Shown piece after piece: positions 2,310 to 45,529 of a DNA stretch of 64,000 nt (its first letter is position 1; each line of letters opens with the position of its first letter). Source of the stretch: Calcarisporiella thermophila CBS 279.70 (taxonomy: Eukaryota > Fungi > Calcarisporiellomycota); NCBI RefSeq assembly GCF_041956535.1, contig NW_027192191.1, positions 371,267 through 435,266 of the forward strand. Direction: 5' to 3'. A program made the translations under genes and the position numbers. Below the pieces are notes generated by a model. The model saw nothing but the letters and a program-made list of their open reading frames with translations. It was not told where the DNA came from and searched no databases.

Positions 2310-5300
2310 ATGTCCCAAAGCATTTGGCTTGTCGCGATTCCCCTTCTCTGCACCTTGCTCTCCATCTTTAATCTCCTCCTCCTGCGTCTCCTGACGCGCC
2401 GATTCCATCGCATCGGTCTAAATAACAATAATAGATGGACTTGGGGGGACTATGTGCACATGGTGCTTTTGATTGAGCAGAGTCTGGTCGTCTTAGCAAG
2501 AATCGGCTGGAGGGGCTGGGTGGAGAGGGAAAAATGCGCAGTGGTGAACGCTGCCCTCATGCTAATTCCTGTGGTAAACTCTCCTTTCCACAACACACCC
2601 ATACTCGTCTGCTTGAACTAGTCTTGTTATTTTATCTTTATCTTTTTGCTCACCCTCACCTCCGGAATCCTTTCCAGGTGTACGCACTTGGTTTCTACAT
2701 TTTCTTTTCAAAAAGCTCTGCTGCTACCACTTCTGCCCGTTTGCTCCCGTTGTACACTGTGTACGCTACATGCGGCGCCGCACAGCTCTATTTCTGGGCA
2801 CGGGGTGACCTCTTAACAATAAATGTAGACTGGATACTGGCGATATTGGAGACCGCAGGTTGGTCCTTGCTGATCCTGCTGGTAGGGAGTCGTCCCCTAT
2901 CGGGAGGAGCCGGTGAAAGCCAGGGGCCCTGCGCACACTATGTAAATTTCCTCTCAATGTCACCTCTAGTTGCCCCATCTGATCCCCTTAATGGTGTGTA
3001 TTTGATCAGGAAAAACAGGCGTCGCCCGAAGCGACCATGTCGTTCTTCTCCAGCATGCTGTTTTCCTGGATGAACGGGCTCATCTCGCTTGGAAGCCATC
3101 GGCCCCTCGAGAAGGAGGATCTGTGGGAATTGGCATCCTGGGTCCATCCGGAGGAGGTGTATGAAGAGTTCCAGGGAAAAAGGTAAGCGGACCCCACCTC
3201 TGAACTATTCTGTTCCCTTGCTCACGCCCCTCCCCGCTGAATTTTCTCTTTGCCAATGTTGGGACTGTGTTACAGATCGAATACACTCCTCCGGCGCATC
3301 TGGCTATTGAACCGTGGCATCTTATGGAGACAGCTGGGTCTCGCACTTGCTGCGGTCGCTCTCAGCTATGCGCCTCCCTACTTCCTTCAACAGTTGCTCC
3401 TCTTTTTCGAGCATCCTAGTCAAGGTCCTCTCGTGGATGCCTATCTAGCCGCGTTTTGCATATTTCTCACGAGCTCCGCCTACACTGTGGTCGACAATCA
3501 GGAGGAGAACTACAATCGATTGCTCATGCTGCGAACCTACGCGAGCTTGCAATCTGAGGTGTACAGAAAGTTCTTGAGACGAAAGCTTCTCACCCAGAAC
3601 CCCGTCACCGGGGAGTCAGAGGCAGAGGTAAGCGACAGGGATGAGACCGGGCGGTTGCTCAATCTAATGACGACGGATGCGGAGCGCGTCTCATCCCTCT
3701 TCAACTACCTCATCGCCCTAAGCATGACCCCACTGCACATTGTTCTGGGCACCCTTTTCCTCTACAACGTGTTGGGCTGGAGCGCCCTCATTGGCATGCT
3801 TGCCCTGCTTCTTGCTCTCCCGCTTCAGCTCGTGTCGAGCCGAGCTTACTCGCGGCTGCAGAAATCGCTGCTGCAGACGAAGGATGCGCGCATCTCCCTG
3901 ACGAGTGAACTGTTGAAGGCGGTGAGGATCGTGAAGTTCTGCGCGTTTGAGCGAAGATTCGGGGACAAGATCTTGGAGGCTAGGGAAAAGGAACTGAAAT
4001 GCTATCTGCACCGTAAGTATTCTCTACCGTTGCTTTTCTTGGCTTGATGATTTATCGGCGAGTTAACTCTCCATCCTTCTCCCCCCCTCTCCGTCTTTTC
4101 TTCGCCTCCCTCCCCGGTAGTGTTCATTATAAGAGGAATTTTCGATTTGACTTGGTTCCTACTGCCCACCCTTGTTACCATAATCGCCCTCTTTTCGTAC
4201 ACGAAGATTTTCCAAAACGAGCTGTAAGCCCTCTCTCTCCTCAAAATGGTCTTTTCGGATGGATTCTATTGACCCCCCCCCTTCTTTGAATTCTCTAGCA
4301 CGGCGGCAAAAACCTTCACCGCCATCACCCTTTTCGACATACTCCGGGTTCCCTTCACCCTCTTCACTGAAAAATTTCTCAAAAGTCAGGACGCCATTGT
4401 GTCGCTTCGCCGCCTCGAAGTATTTTTGCAATCAGAAGAGTCGGAAAAGTACGATCCCCAGCAGGATGTGCAGGGGCAAATCGAGGAGGGGGGTTTGGTG
4501 GAGGAGGGAGACGCTCGCGAGCTTGCCTTGGTGAACGGAACCTTTTGCTGGCCTACCCTAAAGTCCAGCTCGAGCAGCTCAATATCCACGAAGATCTCCA
4601 GCGAGGATCATTGCTCAGGCATCACTCATGGCTTACTCTCTCAGGTCCTCCCTACCTCGTCGACCTCTCTGAAGCCGCCCGTCGCTCTTAGAGCTTTGAC
4701 CATTAGCTTTCCGCGTGGAAAGCTGAGCATTATCTGTGGGCCTACTGGTTGCGGGAAGACGGCTCTCCTGCTTGCTCTTTTGGGGGAGATGGAAAGAGTT
4801 GGCGGATTTGTCCAGGCGCCCACCCTGGGAAGTCAGGAAGAGATTGAGAGGGCCAGGGTGGTGGACTCGAGCGGGCTCTCGCACAATGGGGTTGCGTATG
4901 TTGCGCAACAAGCCTGGCTGCTCAACGCCACCGTACGGGACAATATCCTCTTCGGGGAGGAGTGGAATGCCGAGCGCTACCGCCGAGTCATCGAGGCCTG
5001 CGCGCTCACCAGAGACCTCGAAATTTTGCGTGCCGGCGACTTGACCGAGATCGGCGAGAACGGAATCACGCTCTCCGGCGGCCAGAAGCAGCGTATTGCC
5101 CTGGCCCGTGCTCTATATAGCCCCGCGCGCCACCTCCTCCTCGACGACCCCCTCTCGGCGGTGGATGCCAATGTGGCCCGGCATATATACGAGCAGTGTC
5201 TCACCGGCGACTTGACCAAAGGTCGAACTCGCATTCTGGTGACCCACCACTTGAAGCTCTCTCTGCCCTCTGCAAGCATGATTTTGCTGATGGGGGAGGG

Positions 5301-8103
5301 TGGAACCGTTGTAGGCAGGGGGACGGTGGACGAGATAAAGGAGCAGGGGCTGCTCTCAGAGGTGCTGAGCGTGGAGGGAAAGAAACAGGTGGAGTCCATG
5401 CTGGCGATGAAGGAGGAGGAGGAAGAAGGAGAAGAGGGCGCGGAGACGATAAGCGATCCCAGCTCGCCTTCTCCCGCAATGGGCGACGATGAAGACGGGC
5501 AGTCAAAACCCATCTTCTTGGGGACGAACGAGGAGATGCGGCAGAGAGGTCGTACTCAATGGAGCGTGTATGGACGGTACTTGAAAGCCAATGGCAATGT
5601 GCCTTTTTGGATCCTTCTGATGACCTTGTTTTCCGCTCACCAATTGCTCGAGGTGGTGGACAGGTGGGTGTTGAAGGTCTGGAGCGAGGACACGTCCATT
5701 CCTGGGCTGTGGTCCTGGACACTCACCACCCTGGCGCCCGGTACCTTGATAGCTCTAAGTGCTCAACACGATAACAATTATTATCTCCGTATGAATCCAA
5801 GTGTACCATGCAGTTGGACTGATGATTGGAAAACAGTAACCCTTTTTTTTGTATTTGTATGGTTATGTTACCATAGTGGTCTATTGCTCTGTTCAGCTCG
5901 CCATCGTGGTCATTCTGATCTTCCGGACGGCAGCGTTGTACTATGGCTCTCTACGGGCTTCGCGTAATCTCCACCAGGAGTTGCTGCGGGTGATACTCCA
6001 CGCGCCGCTACGCTTTTTCGACACGTGCCCCATAGGCCGAGTCTTGAACCGCTTCTCGAACGACCTTGACACCATCGACAACACGCTCGCCCTGAACTGG
6101 AGCTTTGTCCTCTGGAACTCGCTGCAGATAATAGCAGGTATCGCGGTGATCTCGGTGATTGCCCCGGCGTTCTTGCTATTTGTGGTGGGCGTGGGGATCC
6201 TGTACAGCGGGATAGGCCTCTACTATATCCGAAGCTCTCGCGAATTGAAGCGTCTGAGCAGCGTCGCGCGTTCCCCGGTCTATTCGCTCATCTCCGAAAC
6301 CTCCACGTAACCTATGCCCCCTATTAGGCTTTCATCTTCTAATTGGTTGATATTTTTTGCTTTATGGTAGTGGGTTGGCGACCATCAGGGCGTTTGGGCG
6401 CGAGGCCTACTTCTTTCGAGATCTCTTGAAAAGGTGCGAACTGACAAGAAAACGGTTGCATATGCATCTATCTCACCCTCTCCCCTCTCCCAATCTAGAA
6501 TCAACCGAACCATCCAGACCACCTATTTTCTCTGGGCCTGCAACCGTTGGCTTGCCGTGCGTGTGGAGCTGCTGGGAAGTTCGATCACCTTTATTGTAGC
6601 CATCTTGCTACTTGGTAATCTGGACCACATCACTGCTGGCGGGGCGGGTTTGGCTCTGACCTTCACTAGGACGGTGCTGTTGTATAGTTATGTAGGTTAT
6701 ATTTTTACTGGGACCACTAATATCTAACACTTTCACCCAACAACTCTGTCCATCCTTGTCTAGTGGCTCATCTTGCAACTCACTTACGTGGAGTTGGAAT
6801 TAAACAGGTAGATGAGTTCGACTACCTTAACCTTCCCCCCCTTCCCCCCTCCCGAATTGGTCCAGCTGACTCTCTCCTATTTTGCATCTAGCGTCGAGCG
6901 AGTTGAGGAGTATATACGCCTCATCCCACAAGAACCTCCTGCCATCATCGAAAATTCAAGACCTCCAGCCGGGGTAGCGCATCCATGAAGATGGCTGTCT
7001 CAAAGGATTTATACTGATGGGTTATTTTTTTTATTTCAACTGTAGTGGCCTTTTGAAGGGAAGATAGTGGTGCAAAATCTCTGGATCCGCTACTCTCCGG
7101 AGCTGGACCCCGTTTTACGAAATCTTTCGTTCGAAATCAAAGGCGGCGAGAAGATAGCTATTGTCGGGCGAACCGGTTCAGGGTATTTCTTCTTTGCTCA
7201 TCCTGTGGCTGTATTCTCACCTTATGTGTTCTCACTCCAATACTTTTACGCTCTTCTCTCTTGATCCAAAGGAAATCCACGCTGGCTCTAGCTCTTATGC
7301 GCTTCATGGACCCTTGTGAAGGAAGAATTGAGATTGATGGGGTGGACATCACAAGTATTGGCGTGGAAGACCTTCGTTCGAGGCTGACCATCATTCCGCA
7401 AGGTATAGGAAAGTGATAAATTAGGATTTCCGAGCTCTGTATTGATCCCGATTTTTGCGGTCCTCCTATGTTGACCGCGGATTCCGCCATAGATGCTATT
7501 CTCATGTCCGGCACCGTCCGTTCCAACCTTGACCAGTTTGATGAGTACGATGACTCCGCACTATGGGATGCTCTGTATAGTGTGCACCTTGTGCCAAGAA
7601 CAGTCTCCAGCTCGTCTTGCTCCTCTCTCTCCTCTTCGGCAGGCTCTTCCCTCGTCGGAACCAATTCGCATGGCCCCGCCCCGAATCACGAGACTGCCCC
7701 TCAGGTCACTGCCATTACCAGCCTAGATGATCCGGTCGCGGAGGGCGGCTCGAATTTCAGCCAGGGCCAAAGGCAGCTCTTGTGTCTCGCCCGTGCGCTT
7801 CTCCATCGCTCAAAGATAGTGATCATGGACGAGGCCACCTCGTCGGTCGACATGCGCACCGACCGCAAGATTCAGCGCACTCTGCGTGCACTAGATCTCT
7901 TCGTCAGTGGCTCAACCCTCATCACCATTGCACATCGTCTTCACACGGTGATCGACTATGACCGGGTGATGGTGTTAGACGCGGGAGAGGTGGTCGAGTT
8001 CGATGAACCTCGCCACCTATTCCATCGGGAAACTAGCATGTTCAGGCAGCTCTGTGTGCAGTCTGGGGAACTCGACCACTTGAGAGGCTTGCTTAAAACT
8101 TGA
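2310..8103 (+). CDS. ABCC/MRP-type full-length ABC transporter (Ybt1/Ycf1-like)
   Basis: Hydrophobic TMD0 and TMD1. NBD1 has [16 protein letters not shown] and LLLDD. An acidic linker precedes TMD2 ([17 protein letters not shown]). NBD2 has GRTGSG/KS, FSQGQRQ, IMDEAT and IAHRL. About 13 GT-AG introns join in frame. Confidence 0.95.
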
Positions 8104-40771: not shown

Positions 40772-42891
40772 ATGAGTGGCGACAACAACGAAATTCAAGC
40801 ACAAAGTGCTCCTAATCTGCAAAAGGATCCAGTAACCGGCGAGATGATCTCCAAGACGTATGCTTTTCTTGGACATTTTCCTTTGATGTAGATCGACTAA
40901 TAATACACTATATAATATTTAGTGAATTCAAGCGCCGTCAAAAGCTCCGGGAAAAGGAAAAGAAGAAGGTATTTTTCTTTAATCTCTTTGCAATTGATTT
41001 CAATTTGGCATCAATAGGCAATGTAATTTTAGGCAGAGGCTGCTGAAGCTGCTGCGGTTCAAGGTCAAACCCGTAACAATAATGAAGAAGAAGGCGAAGA
41101 AACTCTTAACCCAAATGTAAATTCCTTCATATGCAACATTTTCATTTTTCTCTTTTTTTTACTAAATACTTCCAATTTATTATGTTCCTAGCAATATTTC
41201 GAATTACGCTCCAAGGCTGTTTTGAAGATGCGTCAGTCAAAGAACCCTGATCCTTATCCCCACAAGTTCCAAGTTAGCATCTCGTTGCCTGAATTTATTG
41301 CTAAGTACAAGGATATTCCCAAAGGAGAAAAGCTTGATGAAGAAGTAACTGTTGCTGGACGTATCCACAACAAGCGGTTACTTGGCCAGAAAATGCGTTT
41401 CTATGACTTGCACGCTGACGGCGTTAAAATCCAGATTGCCGCTATGGCACAGGATTCCGAAACCGATTTTATGGCCATTCACAATATTCTGCGTCGCGGT
41501 GATATTGTTGGTGTACGTGGATTGCCCGGTAAGACTAAGCCGAAGGACAAGGACGGCGAGCTCTCAATTTTCCCCAAGGATATTGTTTTGCTTTCCCCCT
41601 GCTTGCGTATGTTGCCTAAGGCACACTATGGCTTTAAGGATCAGGAGCAACGCTACCGTCAGCGCTACCTTGATTTGATTATGAACAACTATGTACGTGA
41701 TAAGTTTATTACTCGCTCACGCATCATTAACCACGTGCGTCAATTCCTTGATGAGCTTAATTTCATTGAGGTAGAGACTCCAATGATGAGCCAGATTGCT
41801 GGTGGAGCTACAGCGAAGCCATTCAAAACTCATCACAATGATCTAAATCTGGACATGTTTATGCGCATTGCACCAGAGCTGTATTTGAAGATGTTGATTG
41901 TTGGAGGAATGGACCGCGTTTATGAGATTGGACGCCAATTCCGTAATGAGTCTATCGACCTTACTCACAATCCTGAATTTACGACCTGCGAATTTTACAT
42001 GGCCTATGCCGATATGTACGACTTGATGGATATTACGGAGCGTATGATTTCTAGTATGGTCAAGAAGCTGACAGGCGGGTACCGCATCACCTATCATCCC
42101 GATGGGCCTACTGGCGAGGCTCTCGAAATCGACTTTACACCTCCATTCCGCCGCATTAATATGATCGAGGATCTGGAGAAGAAGTTGAATGTGAAGTTCC
42201 CGCCGGGCGACCAGTTACACACAGATGAGACCAACAAGTTCTTGTCGGATCTCTGTGACAAATTCAACGTGGAGTGTGGTGCCCCTCGGACAAATGCTCG
42301 GTTACTCGATAAGCTGGTTGGCGAATTCTTGGAAACTGATTGCGTGAACCCCGCTTTCATCTGTGGACATCCGCAGATGATGTCACCTCTCGCCAAGTAT
42401 CACCGCAGCTTGCCAGGATTGTGCGAACGATTTGAATTGTTTGTTGCAAGAAAGGAAGTCGTGAACGCATACACGGTAGACCATTTTACTTTTCTCATTC
42501 TCGCGCTCATTCTGACACATAGTATTCAATTTCTTAGGAGTTGAACGATCCATTTGATCAGCGTGAACGTTTTGAACAGCAGGCACGAGACAAGGCTGCA
42601 GGAGATGATGAGGCCCAAATGATCGATGAGACTTTCTGCACATCGCTCGAATACGGTTTGCCCCCTACTGGTGGATGGGGTATGGGTATTGATCGTATGA
42701 CCATGTTCTTGACGGTAAGATTTACATTTTTCATCTGCGGCTATCGGCCTAGACTCACTTTAAACTTGATACCCCTATCATAGGATTCCCACAATATCAA
42801 GGAGGTCTTGCTCTTCCCTGCTATGAAGCCAGAGGATAGCAACCCGGTTCGAGTTTCTCAAGCTGCCGGAAGTGATCTCTCAACCGCGTGA
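40772..42891 (+). CDS. KRS1: Cytosolic lysyl-tRNA synthetase (class II)
   Basis: YPHKF, OB fold, [59 protein letters not shown] and VLLFPAMKP. Five introns. Confidence 0.97.
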
Positions 42892-43124: not shown

Positions 43125-44168
43125 ATGACCACATCAGATCCAGAAACACCTCTCGAATCACCTCTTCCAGCTACAACAGCTTCGATTGATACCGATTCTG
43201 CTTCTACGGTTCAGGAACAAGAAGAAGCAGAAAGAAAAGCCCAACAACGTCGCGAAAAAGAAGAGCGTGAACGTGAGGAAGAGGAACGCGATCCGGCGCT
43301 TAAGGCAAAGCGCGATTGGATCAAAAAAATTCGGCTCATGTTTTGTGTTCGCCCTGAATTTGAAGTGACAAAAAATATGATTTTTGAAGATGGCCGATTA
43401 AATCAAGAGTATATTCCTATAATATTTATAGATCTCCAAAGATTTGTAGAATTAACAGAATTTGAAATATGTAGTTACTTCCGGCCGCCAAAGGGTGCTC
43501 GCGAAGAGGCAGAACAGCCCAGGAAATGGACTTCTAAAGAGCGTGAGCTACTTATTCAGGGCATCGAAAAACATGGAATTGGAAACTTCAGAATGATTTC
43601 TGAAGAGCTCCTGCCTGCATGGGTATAGTTAATTATTGCGAAAAGCTTACTAATGGTAGTTCTGAATTGTTTAAGTATTCTGTTGTAGTCTGGCAATGAT
43701 CTCCGTGTTAAAACAATGCGCGTTATTGGCCGTCAGAATCTTCAGCTTTACAAGGGTTGGCGCGGTAGTGCCAGCGATATTGTAAAAGAATTTGAGCGCA
43801 ACAAGAAAATTGGTCTTGAAACAGGTCAATGGAAGCAAGGTGTGCTGGTATATGACGACGATGGCATAGTTTTAAAGAAAATCATGGAAACTGAAAGCCA
43901 GATGGCAGGAAGAAAAGGCCCTGCACCGCTGGAGGAAGAAGAGGAATTGCCGGAAGAAGAGGAATTGCCTGGAGAAATCGAAGAGGATGAGGAGATGGAG
44001 GAAGGCGTGGAAGTGGAAGAAATGGAGCAAGACGAAGGTGAAAATGGCGATGAAGAGGACGATGACTATGAAGAAGAAAAGGTATGTCGAAATAATTAGA
44101 ATAAATCAATTAGTGCGATATTAACTGCTCCTAAACTAAAGCTTGTACGAAAAAGACGGCGAGACTAG
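43125..44168 (+). CDS. Myb/SANT-like HTH protein, putative p1/p2-type accessory subunit of the MTA1c/AMT1 DNA 6mA methyltransferase complex
   Basis: Introns 43409-43474, 43623-43688 and 44082-44141. Core EDGRLNQDYF...WTSKERELLIQGIEKHGIGNF...DLRVKTMRVIGRQNLQLYKG. Acidic tail and final exon LVRKRRRD*. The gene model is secure; the functional call rests on recalled similarity. Confidence 0.7.
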
Positions 44169-44271: not shown

Positions 44272-45529
44272 TCAGATTGAATATTCCGCTGCTGCCTTCT
44301 TCTTTACTTCTGACAACGTAGGGATTGATCTCATTGCTCCACTTTTGCTAACAGTCAATGCACCCGCGGCCATAGCTATCTTCAATGACTTCTCTACCAG
44401 CTCAAAGTATGTATCCTCGGATTTTTGCTCAACCTTTTCCCATTCGGTGGCCAAGCTTCCCACAAAATACCCCTACGTTATTATATGGATGGCGTGAACC
44501 AACAATAGTTTATACCGCATTAAAAATCAAATTACCACAAAAGCGTCGCCAGCGCATGTGGTGTCCACCGCTTGGACCTGAATAGCGGATAATCGGTATT
44601 CCCTTGCTGAGCTGGTTCTATTATATTTGAAGCGTGCGCATACCCCTTCTCCGCCAAGTGTTATTATAATACCAAGTAGGTTCGGAAACTTTTCAGCCAA
44701 TTCGCGCATAATAGTTTCGTAGTCGGACGTGGAAGAGGCGCCAGTTTGCGCATAAATATCACATGCCTCGTGCTCGTTTACAACAAGATAATGTATTTTA
44801 TCAAGGTGATAATTCCGAACAATATCGGGTGTGCAGGGCGCAGGATTGAAAACAATTGACCAGTTTCCTAAGAATATATTTAGCGTCTTGGAATAAACAT
44901 AAAAAAGTATAATTATTTACCAAGGTTAGCGGCTTCCTGAATAATTAAATCCACAGAATTGATCTCATTCTGAACTACTAGCCATTTACTTTCACTTCTC
45001 TTTTCATGAATGAATTTGTGGATATAGTCAAGGCTAATTTCCCTATTTACACCAGGGAATAGCACAATGGCATTATCTCGAGTTTCTTTGCTCAGCTGGA
45101 TAATAGCCCTACCAGTTTGACCTTCTGGTCTGTGTTCTGTCATTGATGTGTCGACCTGTGCTTTTTCAAGATCTTCGAGGATCCAGAGCCCGTCATTGCC
45201 CACGCATCCGGCAAGGAAGCATGCATTCGAGGCCTATGGGTAATAATGATCAGAAATATATTAAGAGTGACTATATGTAAAATATGATGAGTACCACTCC
45301 GAGAGCGTATGCTTGATTTGCGCCTATAATTACGCGTAGTCATTAGTTTATGAGAGAAATGCAGGCAAAAATCTAAGTGGCACGAGGAATAATTACCTTT
45401 GCCTCCAGGGCCAATACTCCTATTAGCGGAGGATATAGTCTGGCCCGACCTGACGATATGTGGGACTTCGTATACTTCGTCAATATTAATGGAACCAAAA
45501 CATAGAATGTAGGGTTTTCTGTAAGTCAT
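44272..45529 (-). CDS. RBK1: Ribokinase (PfkB family)
   Basis: GSINID, PGGKGANQA, VGNDG, TGRAIIQL, FNPAP, VNEHEA, ITLGGEG and DTTCAGDAFVG. Confidence 0.9.

What the first reader, a model, noticed from the sequence alone, without database searches (positions are those of the whole stretch)
43125..44168. Small Myb/HTH protein looks like a p2/p1 subunit of the 6mA DNA-methyltransferase complex (MTA1c/AMT1)
Seen: the spliced protein contains, in order, WIKKIR..., EDGRLNQDYF..KG, WT......L..GIE..G.GNF..I, DLRVKT..VIG..NL..Y.G and E..RN...G. Established: ciliate MTA1c (MTA1, MTA9, p1, p2) writes symmetric ApT 6mA; p1 and p2 are small homeobox/Myb-like proteins; heavy ApT 6mA occurs in many early-diverging fungi. 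Inference: this motif order matches my recollection of Tetrahymena p2 along its whole length (EDGxLNxxYF, WT, GIExxGxGN, LxxxTxxxxG, YxG), not just a generic Myb repeat. If correct, this fungus carries a p2-like subunit, extended with a charged N-terminus, a long acidic tail and an NLS, and probably has an adenine-methylation epigenetic system.
Basis: partly seen in the sequence, partly recalled or inferred. Interest (0 to 1): 0.8.

Follow-up and report, generated by a model that had tools for sequence, protein, structure and literature searches.

The report
Fungal p2 subunit of 6mA methyltransferase
This four-exon gene of the fungus Calcarisporiella thermophila encodes a homolog of p2 (AMTP2), the small helper protein that in ciliates switches on the DNA adenine methyltransferase MTA1; the same genome carries the other three subunits, so the find is solid but belongs to a known kind.

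Summary
Observation confirmed and interpretation supported.

- **Sequence.** A profile of 59 fungal orthologs hits only the solved p2 chains of the ciliate MTA1 complex: Paramecium p2 at E=1e-10 and Tetrahymena p2 at 3e-8, over nearly the whole p2 length. Generic Myb domains reach only E=0.002, and p1 is not hit.
- **Fold.** An AF2 model of an ortholog (pLDDT 87) gives p2 chains as the top nine Foldseek hits. VIA-align gives Z 15.6 for p2, about 10.9 for p1 and at most 6.8 for ordinary Myb.
- **Partners.** The genome is C. thermophila, because its Mta1 exons are identical to a named NCBI protein. It also encodes Mta1 (E=2e-48 to Tetrahymena MTA1), an MTA9-clade gene (8e-7) and a true p1 (1e-13).
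- **Predicted binding.** A same-species Umbelopsis Mta1/p2-like pair passes the test (ipSAE 0.80; best control 0.00), through the p2 N-terminal domain.

Fungal P2 is mentioned in the literature only briefly. Mucor was reported to lack it, yet orthologs appear in Mucor, Rhizopus and most early-diverging fungal lineages.

Earlier scan notes had flagged the p1 and MTA9-type genes of this genome on other contigs, but not this gene.

6mA itself, expression and the last intron remain untested.

The parts
43125..43408 (+). Exon 1 (codons 1-94 plus 2 bases). It holds a charged, lineage-specific N-terminal extension (aa 1-60; 18 D/E, 9 K/R) and then the p2-type N-terminal domain (aa ~65-94: WIKKIRLMFCVRPEFEVTKNMIFEDGRLNQ).
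   Evidence: Translation; composition; profile positions 8-66 match window 43227-43415 at E=1.4e-16.
43409..43474 (+). Intron 1: 66 nt, GTATAT...TAG, in frame and without a stop codon.
   Evidence: Orthologs read LNQDYFRPPKG straight across this junction.
43475..43622 (+). Exon 2. It holds the Y96-F97 motif (equivalent to Tetrahymena p2 Y41/F42), a linker, and helices 1-2 of the Myb/homeobox-like domain (KWT...LLIQGIEKHGIGNFRMISEELLPAW).
   Evidence: Pfam PF00249 at 28.2 bits against a cut-off of 24.4; profile positions 64-112 at E=2.1e-18.
43623..43688 (+). Intron 2: 66 nt, GTATAG...TAG, with a TACTAAT branch-like site and an in-frame stop.
   Evidence: Orthologs read LPxWSxNDLR across this junction. 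Public models P0001 and P0009 mis-handle the same intron.
43689..43907 (+). Exon 3, first part. It holds helix 3 of the homeobox-like domain (NDLRVKTMRVIGRQNLQLY, basic) and the p2-type C-terminal domain (…EFERNKKIGLETGQWKQGVLVYDDDG…).
   Evidence: profile positions 112-186 at E=1.4e-33. The ortholog model aligns to p2 residues 48-137 with rmsd 1.0 A and Z 15.6.
43908..44081 (+). Exon 3, second part: an acidic tail of 58 aa with 33 D/E, including the EEEELP repeats. It is lineage-specific.
   Evidence: Tails of orthologs vary in length and composition.
44082..44141 (+). Putative intron 3: 60 nt, GTATGT...AAG. It is inferred from splice consensus only.
   Evidence: No RNA run was listed.
44142..44168 (+). 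Putative exon 4: LVRKRRRD plus the stop codon, a basic NLS-like end.
   Evidence: The Spizellomyces ortholog P0083 also ends in a KKRRR-type run. The exon itself is unverified.

Best explanation
The gene encodes the Calcarisporiella thermophila ortholog of p2 (AMTP2), the small non-catalytic subunit of the eukaryotic DNA N6-adenine methyltransferase complex MTA1c (AMT1 complex).

Most likely mechanism, by analogy with the solved ciliate complexes:
- The N-terminal domain packs against the methyltransferase domain of Mta1. In the window this domain runs from about aa 65 to 97 and includes R70, F73, Y96 and F97. It contacts the stretch just before strand beta-1 and the C-terminal end of Mta1, and holds the SAM-binding loops open, so that Mta1 can bind its cofactor.
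- The homeobox-like domain and the C-terminal helix hold the N-terminal helix of Mta1.
- Together with Mta9 and P1, which are encoded elsewhere in the same genome, the complex would write symmetric 6mA at ApT.

What is shown here: homology to p2 in sequence and fold, presence of all partner genes, and a passing in-silico binding test on an orthologous pair.

What is inferred: actual binding, SAM activation, nuclear import through the basic tail, and the presence of 6mA in this fungus.
For: - **Sequence.** The profile of 7 orthologs hits PDB p2 chains at E=5.5e-9 (Paramecium) and about 6e-6 (Tetrahymena). The profile of 59 orthologs gives E=1e-10 (profile 36-165 against chain 11-127 of 128) and 3.3e-8. 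Next best is TRF2 Myb at 0.002 over about 35 residues, and no p1 chain appears at E<=1.
- **The window gene belongs to that family.** Its exons match the profile colinearly and are 62-70% identical to the core of orthologs from several phyla.
- **Fold.** The AF2 model of ortholog P0016 has pLDDT 86.8. The top nine Foldseek hits are all p2 chains (E 9e-7 to 5e-4, about 135 columns of 125-130-residue targets). VIA-align gives Z 15.6, rmsd 1.0 A over 89 residues for p2, against Z 10.9 for p1 and at most 6.8 for ordinary Myb domains.
- **Functional residues.** Tetrahymena p2 Y41 and F42 align with the invariant Y and F of the family (Y96/F97 in the window). F42E and M21E/L25E abolish activity (PMC12485025). 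Y41 and R22 hydrogen-bond MTA1, and the NTD activates SAM binding (PMC9174199).
- **Partners in the same genome.** Mta1 at E=2e-48 to Tetrahymena MTA1, against 6e-23 to METTL3. An MTA9-clade exon at 8e-7 and 2.6e-6 to MTA9/AMT7, above MTA1 at 2e-3. p1 at 1.2e-13.
- **Predicted binding.** Complex prediction on the same-species Umbelopsis ramanniana pair (Mta1 P0129 with p2-like P0016:28-182) gave a score of 0.80 against a best control of 0.00. On the tool's calibration that mark was reached by 51 of 78 solved complexes and 2 of 108 mismatched pairs. Runs agree in at least 79% of contacts and partner pLDDT is at least 82. Confident contacts are p2-like residues 31-68 with Mta1 residues 68-96 and 242-260, the same surfaces as in the crystal structures.
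- **Distribution.** The family is single-copy in this genome. It is present in Mucoromycota, Mortierellomycotina, Glomeromycotina, Zoopagomycota, Chytridiomycota and Neocallimastigomycota. Many of the same genera appear in the Mta1 hit list.
Against: - No experimental or read-level evidence exists for expression, splicing or 6mA in this organism; no RNA run was listed.
- The spliced protein of the window itself was never searched or folded as one chain. Fold and complex evidence come from orthologs about 65-70% identical in the core.
- Single exon pieces alone do not find p2 in the PDB; only profiles do.
- The complex test could pass from memory, because a like complex is solved. Its confident contacts cover only the N-terminal domain and not the expected clamp on the Mta1 N-terminal helix.
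- Helix 3 of the homeobox-like domain is basic in fungi (R, K, R, R) but acidic in ciliate p2, so that part may work differently.
- Fungal studies describe a working Mta1/Mta9/P1 set without P2.
Confidence: 0.8

Rival explanations
1. It is a p2-derived protein whose job has shifted in fungi. With its basic, almost invariant recognition helix it would act mainly as a DNA- or chromatin-binding or targeting factor. It might still be attached to Mta1, or might serve another partner such as the METTL3/METTL14 pair also encoded here, rather than activating SAM binding.
For: Helix 3 carries R, K, R, R in fungi but E, E, D, E in ciliates. The fungal core is unusually conserved, at 55-80% identity across phyla. 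The genome also has METTL3 and METTL14 orthologs. The complex model gave no confident contacts for the homeobox-like or C-terminal domains.
Against: The N-terminal-domain residues that activate MTA1 in ciliates are conserved. The predicted interface reproduces the p2 NTD-MTA1 interface. The listed hits come from lineages known to carry Mta1.
Confidence: 0.12
2. It is an ordinary single-repeat Myb/SANT protein, such as a TRF/Tbf1-like telomere binder or an Ada2/CoREST-type chromatin adaptor, with no link to adenine methylation.
For: Pfam sees only PF00249. TRF2 is the best single-sequence PDB hit for exons 1-2, at E about 0.1.
Against: TRF2 and other Myb domains cover only about 30-50 residues at E>=0.002 and Z<=6.8. 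The p2 chains match about 115-135 residues, including the flanking N- and C-terminal domains, at E=1e-10 and Z 15.6.
Confidence: 0.03
3. It is the p1 (AMTP1) subunit rather than p2.
For: p1 and p2 share the homeobox-like domain plus a following helix; p1 chains reach Z 10.9.
Against: A separate gene on contig C20 matches Tetrahymena p1 at E=1.2e-13, with the QTQRLLGQQS-type helix. The family profile does not hit p1 at E<=1. p2 scores about 5 Z units higher.
Confidence: 0.03
4. It is a decaying or silent gene copy without function.
For: No expression data could be obtained. No protein of this locus appeared among the listed database hits.
Against: The reading frame is intact across three exons with canonical splice sites. 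All invariant family residues are present and it is the only copy in the genome.
Confidence: 0.02

Closest known systems
Ciliate p2 / AMTP2 (Tetrahymena thermophila, Paramecium tetraurelia; PDB 7F4L, 7F4T, 7YI8, 8XYL)
   Same: It has the same three-part architecture: an N-terminal domain, a Myb/homeobox-like domain and a C-terminal helix. The profile match is significant over about 115-130 residues and the fold match is Z 15.6 at rmsd 1.0 A. The Y-F pair and the M/I-R-L motif of the NTD are conserved. The predicted contact with the same Mta1 surfaces is reproduced. It co-occurs with MTA1, MTA9 and p1.
   Different: Identity is only about 25%. There is a 7-residue insertion in the NTD and a 6-residue one before the Myb tryptophan. 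The recognition helix is basic rather than acidic. The window protein adds a charged N-terminal extension of about 60 aa, an acidic tail of about 58 aa and a putative basic end, so it has 283 codons against about 140.
Fungal MTA1c as described in Rhizopus microsporus and Mucor lusitanicus (Mta1, Mta9, P1; Lax et al. 2024, 2025)
   Same: It is the same pathway and the same lineage group. The window's genome has orthologs of all three described subunits.
   Different: The published fungal complex is treated as three subunits. P2 is said to occur in 'some EDF' and to be absent from Mucor. Here, orthologs of this gene were found in R. microsporus (P0020), Mucor circinelloides (P0111), M. mucedo, Phycomyces and many other lineages.
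p1 / AMTP1
   Same: It shares the homeobox-like domain with a following helix (Z about 10.9) and the L..T.RL.G.Q pattern in helix 3. Both bind the N-terminal helix of MTA1 in ciliates.
   Different: p1 lacks the EDGxLNxxYF N-terminal domain and has a C-terminal helix-turn-helix instead. In this genome it is a separate gene on contig C20.
Single-repeat Myb/SANT proteins (TRF1/TRF2, Tbf1, Ada2, CoREST)
   Same: They share the three-helix Myb core (Pfam PF00249; Z 6-7).
   Different: They have no counterpart of the flanking N- and C-terminal domains and match only about 50 residues.

Membership tests
p2 / AMTP2 subunit of MTA1c | Significant sequence similarity to solved p2 over the NTD, homeobox-like domain and CTD, not only over the Myb core | tested here: met
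   Ortholog profiles give Paramecium p2 at E=1e-10 (chain 11-127 of 128) and Tetrahymena p2 at 3.3e-8 (chain 27-133 of 142). The window exons fit the same profile colinearly.
p2 / AMTP2 subunit of MTA1c | The p2 fold: a homeobox-like domain plus C-terminal helix, preceded by an extended NTD | tested here: met
   The AF2 model of ortholog P0016 (pLDDT 86.8) has p2 chains as its top nine Foldseek hits. VIA-align gives Z 15.6, rmsd 1.0 A over 89 residues. This was tested on an ortholog, not on the window's spliced protein.
p2 / AMTP2 subunit of MTA1c | NTD residues that contact MTA1 and activate SAM binding (Tetrahymena R22, Y41, F42; hydrophobic M21 and L25) | tested here: met
   Y41 and F42 align to the invariant Y and F of the family (Y96/F97 in the window). 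The M-R-L motif aligns with Paramecium p2 (I69-R70-L71 in the window; R invariant in fungi). Equivalence of R22, M21 and L25 in Tetrahymena is inferred through the Paramecium alignment only.
p2 / AMTP2 subunit of MTA1c | Physical binding to MTA1/AMT1 | tested here: inconclusive
   This is in-silico evidence only, on the Umbelopsis ramanniana orthologs. The score was 0.80 against a best control of 0.00; that mark was reached by 51 of 78 solved complexes and 2 of 108 mismatched pairs. Contacts agree in at least 79% of cases and partner pLDDT is at least 82. It supports binding but does not show it, and a like complex is solved, so the pass may reflect memory.
p2 / AMTP2 subunit of MTA1c | Co-occurrence with MTA1, MTA9 and p1 in the same genome | tested here: met
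   Mta1 lies on C2 (E=2e-48; exons identical to C. thermophila P0123). The MTA9-clade gene lies on C6 (8e-7). p1 lies on C20 (1.2e-13).
p2 / AMTP2 subunit of MTA1c | The organism carries symmetric ApT 6mA | not testable with these tools
   No sequencing run was listed, and no paper links Calcarisporiella with 6mA.
p1 / AMTP1 subunit of MTA1c | N-terminal homeobox-like domain of the p1 type plus a C-terminal helix-turn-helix | tested here: not met
   The family profile gives no p1 hit at E<=1. The genome's true p1 is a different gene.
Myb/SANT superfamily (Pfam PF00249) | Three-helix Myb repeat | tested here: met
   Exon 2 alone scores 28.2 bits against a cut-off of 24.4. The full ortholog P0016 scores only 20.8 bits, which explains the 'hypothetical protein' labels.

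The most novel reading that the evidence does not exclude
P2 is not an occasional extra. It would be a near-universal fourth subunit of the fungal 6mA writer, overlooked in Mucor and Rhizopus because it is too divergent for BLAST. Fungal Mta1, like ciliate MTA1, would need it to bind SAM. In fungi its basic, almost invariant recognition helix would additionally contact DNA. With look-alike clusters in green algae, the four-subunit complex would date back to the common ancestor of the lineages that carry ApT 6mA.
Probability: 0.5. Interest if true: 0.6.

Novelty: new member of a known kind. Interest (0 to 1): 0.45.

Why it matters
Symmetric ApT 6mA is an essential epigenetic mark in Rhizopus, and its writer is currently modelled in fungi as Mta1/Mta9/P1. 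In ciliates, MTA1 cannot bind SAM stably until p2 is attached.

If the same holds in fungi, three things follow:
- Any reconstitution, structure or genetic dissection of the fungal complex that omits this protein is incomplete.
- The reported absence of p2 from Mucor would be a detection artefact.
- All listed database members of this family carry only 'hypothetical' or generic Myb-type source names, so they could be given a function.

For this particular window the result is a sound annotation rather than a new kind of system.

Tried and rejected
**Searches that gave nothing useful**
- Single-sequence phmmer of the exon pieces against the PDB gave only weak TRF2 Myb hits (E about 0.1) or nothing. 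p2 appeared only with ortholog profiles.
- Pfam gives only a generic Myb hit for this gene; the other family libraries (PHROGs, NCBIfam, PADLOC) were not run.
- No sequencing run holding this stretch was listed in the search for RNA runs. Splicing, expression and 6mA stay untested.
- Beh et al. 2019 (PMC6570567) is not held, and the supplement of Lax et al. 2025 is not held. I could therefore not see which fungi those authors scored as P2-positive, nor the accession of their P1.

**Readings considered and dropped**
- The gene as a TRF/Tbf1/Ada2-type Myb protein.
- The gene as p1.
- The published fungal 'P1' being this same family. I consider this unlikely, because the genome's true p1 is found by plain phmmer at 1e-13 whereas this family is not. 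It was not checked directly.

**Limits of the complex test**
- The complex model gave confident contacts only for the N-terminal domain. The expected clamp of the homeobox-like and C-terminal domains on the Mta1 N-terminal helix was not confidently placed.

- The spliced model was searched exon by exon and through database orthologs. The joined protein was not sent to any search, fold or complex tool.
- Absence from Dikarya and the range outside fungi are therefore not established.

Full report
**1. The observation**

The stretch 43125-44168 (+) reads as a four-exon gene: exons 43125-43408, 43475-43622, 43689-44081 and 44142-44168. The three short introns start GTATAT, GTATAG and GTATGT and each ends in AG.
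- WIKKIR
- EDGRLNQ-D-YFRPPKG, with the D codon split by intron 1
- KWT...LLIQGIEKHGIGNF
- DLRVKTMRVIGRQNLQLYKG
- EFERNKKIG

It also gives a 58-residue tail with 33 acidic residues and a final LVRKRRRD.

Junctions 1 and 2 are confirmed by orthologs that read straight across them. A search of the window's own genome with the family profile confirms them as well. It found only this locus, as three colinear pieces matching profile positions 8-66, 64-112 and 112-186 (E=1e-16, 2e-18 and 1e-33).

Intron 3 and the basic last exon rest on splice consensus alone. No sequencing run holding this stretch was listed.

The joined protein was never sent to a search, fold or complex tool.

**2. What family it is**

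Pfam sees only a Myb repeat in exon 2. Single exon pieces find nothing better than TRF2 in the PDB.

A word search with the exon 1-2 open frame found small 'hypothetical' or 'Myb-like' proteins of Mucoromycota. A profile of seven of them found 203 proteins. The 120 listed include:
- Mucorales, among them Rhizopus microsporus, R. arrhizus, Mucor circinelloides, M. mucedo and Phycomyces
- Umbelopsis
- Mortierellomycotina
- Glomeromycotina
- Kickxello- and Zoopagomycotina
- Basidiobolus
- many chytrids
- Neocallimastix

The window's exons are 62-70% identical to the cores of the best of these, drawn from several phyla.

The profile matches the solved p2 subunits of the ciliate MTA1 complex and nothing else comparably:

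| Target | 7-sequence profile | 59-sequence profile |
|---|---|---|
| Paramecium p2 (7F4T) | E=5.5e-9 | E=1e-10, chain residues 11-127 of 128 |
| Tetrahymena p2/AMTP2 (7F4L, 8XYL, 7YI8) | E about 6e-6 | E=3e-8 to 7e-8, chain residues 27-133 of 142 |
| TRF2 Myb (next best) | E=0.04 | E=0.002, about 35 residues |
| p1 chains | not hit | none at E<=1 |

**3. Fold**

An AlphaFold2 model of the Umbelopsis ramanniana ortholog P0016, built with the 59-sequence alignment, has mean pLDDT 86.8.

In Foldseek against the PDB, the nine hits with E<=5e-4 are all p2 chains. Each aligns over about 135 columns to targets of 125-130 residues, at 25-27% identity. p1 chains follow at E 0.02-0.08 and ordinary Myb domains at E>0.1.

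VIA-align gives:
- p2: Z 15.6, rmsd 1.0 A over 89 residues (model 78-166 against p2 48-137)
- p1: Z 10.8-10.9
- TRF and c-Myb domains: Z at most 6.8, over about 50 residues

**4. The partners are in the same genome**

The three exons of the MT-A70 gene on contig C2 are exact substrings of NCBI protein VTP21DRAFT_4234 of Calcarisporiella thermophila. That names the organism.

| Subunit | Location | Evidence |
|---|---|---|
| Mta1 | C2 | Second exon matches Tetrahymena MTA1 at E=2e-48, against 6e-23 for METTL3 |
| p1 | C20, downstream of RNR2 | Matches Tetrahymena p1 at E=1.2e-13. Found from an earlier scan note. |
| MTA9-clade | C6, just upstream of Sec3 | Best exon matches Paramecium MTA9 at 8e-7, Tetrahymena MTA9/AMT7 at 2.6e-6 and MTA9-B at 3e-4, ahead of MTA1 at 2e-3 and METTL3 at 0.04. 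Found from a second scan note. |
| p2-like | C1 (this window) | Sections 2 and 3 |

All four MTA1c subunits are thus encoded. The other MT-A70 loci are a METTL3 ortholog (1e-63), a METTL14 ortholog (5e-40) and a METTL4-like gene with DPPWPNKS (read by eye).

**5. How it most likely works**

In ciliates, p2 binds MTA1 in two ways:
- Its N-terminal domain packs on the methyltransferase domain and opens the SAM pocket. MTA1 binds SAM stably only with p2 attached (PMC9174199).
- Its homeobox-like and C-terminal domains hold the N-terminal helix of MTA1 (PMC9852454).

The mutations M21E/L25E and F42E in the p2 NTD abolish activity without breaking the complex (PMC12485025).

In the HMMER alignment, Tetrahymena Y41 and F42 fall on the invariant Y and F of the fungal family (Y96/F97 in the window). 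The M-R-L motif of Paramecium p2 falls on the fungal M/I-R-L (I69-R70-L71 in the window).

I ran the binding test on a same-species pair from Umbelopsis ramanniana: Mta1 P0129 with p2-like P0016 residues 28-182. Results:
- The score was 0.80 and the best of three controls was 0.00.
- On the tool's calibration that mark was reached by 51 of 78 solved complexes and 2 of 108 mismatched pairs.
- The runs agree in at least 79% of contacts, and the partner's pLDDT is at least 82.
- Confident contacts join p2-like residues 31-68 (the NTD) to Mta1 residues 68-96 and 242-260. These are the segment before strand beta-1 and the C-terminal end, the same surfaces described for Tetrahymena.

This supports binding but does not show it. 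A like complex is solved, so the pass may reflect likeness. It also concerns orthologs, not the window's own chain.

**6. Differences from ciliate p2**

- Identity is about 25%.
- The fungal NTD has a 7-residue insertion.
- Helix 3 of the homeobox-like domain is basic and nearly invariant in fungi (LRxKxIRLIGRQNLQLY) but acidic in ciliates. In Tetrahymena the acidic helix faces the MTA1 helix and argues against DNA binding. The fungal version could still touch DNA or an acidic stretch of Mta1. This is inference.
- The charged N-terminal extension, the acidic tail and the basic end of the window's protein are lineage-specific. Orthologs differ in these parts.

**7. Novelty**

p2 is a known subunit. 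The literature on fungal P2 says the following:
- Yan et al. 2023, citing Beh et al. [quoted passage not shown]
- Lax et al. [quoted passage not shown]
- Lax et al. 2024 state that Mucor has no p2.
- A 2026 review lists the fungal complex as Mta1/Mta9/P1.

Against that background, this gene is a new member of a known kind. The added points are:
- The family is present in nearly all early-diverging fungal lineages listed, including Mucor and Rhizopus.
- Every listed database member carries only a 'hypothetical', 'uncharacterized' or generic Myb/SANT-type source name, apart from one mislabelled fusion model and a few with no name at all.
- No protein of this locus appeared among the listed hits, although the Mta1 of the same species did.

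ESM-Atlas look-alikes by features (0.96) and by shape (TM 0.53-0.60 over residues 22-189) are clusters dominated by green algae. These are leads only.

**8. Not done**

- Absence from Dikarya and the range outside fungi are therefore not established.
- 6mA, expression and physical binding remain to be tested.

Noticed in passing
window 43409-43474: Intron 1 of the gene is 66 nt, in frame and free of stop codons, so ORF finders read exons 1 and 2 as one 167-aa ORF (43125-43628). Retention would insert 22 residues directly before the functionally critical Y-F pair.
   Followed up: partly
G000:C20 (L011 about 2700-3850): The p1 (AMTP1) ortholog lies directly downstream of an RNR2 gene. Its Myb-like exon matches Tetrahymena p1 at E=1.2e-13, and later exons encode a coiled-coil-like stretch. 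The full gene model was not worked out.
   Followed up: partly
G000:C6 (L015 about 6900-7750): An MTA9/AMT6-7-clade MT-A70 gene lies just upstream of Sec3. It falls below the Pfam MT-A70 cut-off (19.2 bits against 23.9) and so was missed by the genome-wide family scan. Its motif-IV position reads DPPF.
   Followed up: partly
G000:C21 (L001), C10 (L002), C8 (L003): The genome also encodes clear METTL3 (E=1e-63) and METTL14 (E=5e-40) orthologs and a METTL4-like gene (DPPWPNKS). This fungus therefore keeps both the RNA m6A writer pair and the DNA 6mA complex, a combination that Lax et al. 2025 highlight for chytrids.
   Followed up: partly
Public proteins P0001, P0009, P0072, P0115: Several public gene models of this family look wrong. 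The Jimgerdemannia model stops at intron 2. A JGI model retains intron 2. One R. microsporus model lacks most of the conserved N-terminal domain. The Mucor ambiguus model carries Myb and DAD4 (PF08650) domain hits together and its UniRef source name is 'DASH complex subunit DAD4'.
   Followed up: no
window 42541-42890 (+) and 44527-44709 (-): The flanking genes are the 3' end of a class II (D/K/N) aminoacyl-tRNA synthetase upstream (Pfam PF00152, E=2e-14) and a pfkB-family sugar kinase on the opposite strand downstream (PF00294, E=9e-6). Neither has an evident link to the finding.
   Followed up: partly
Ortholog model m6820229c0f59 against PDB p1 chains: p1 and p2 share not only the Myb core but also the following helix (Z about 10.9 over 84-87 residues) and an L..T.RL.G.Q pattern in helix 3. 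This suggests the two subunits are old paralogs.
   Followed up: no
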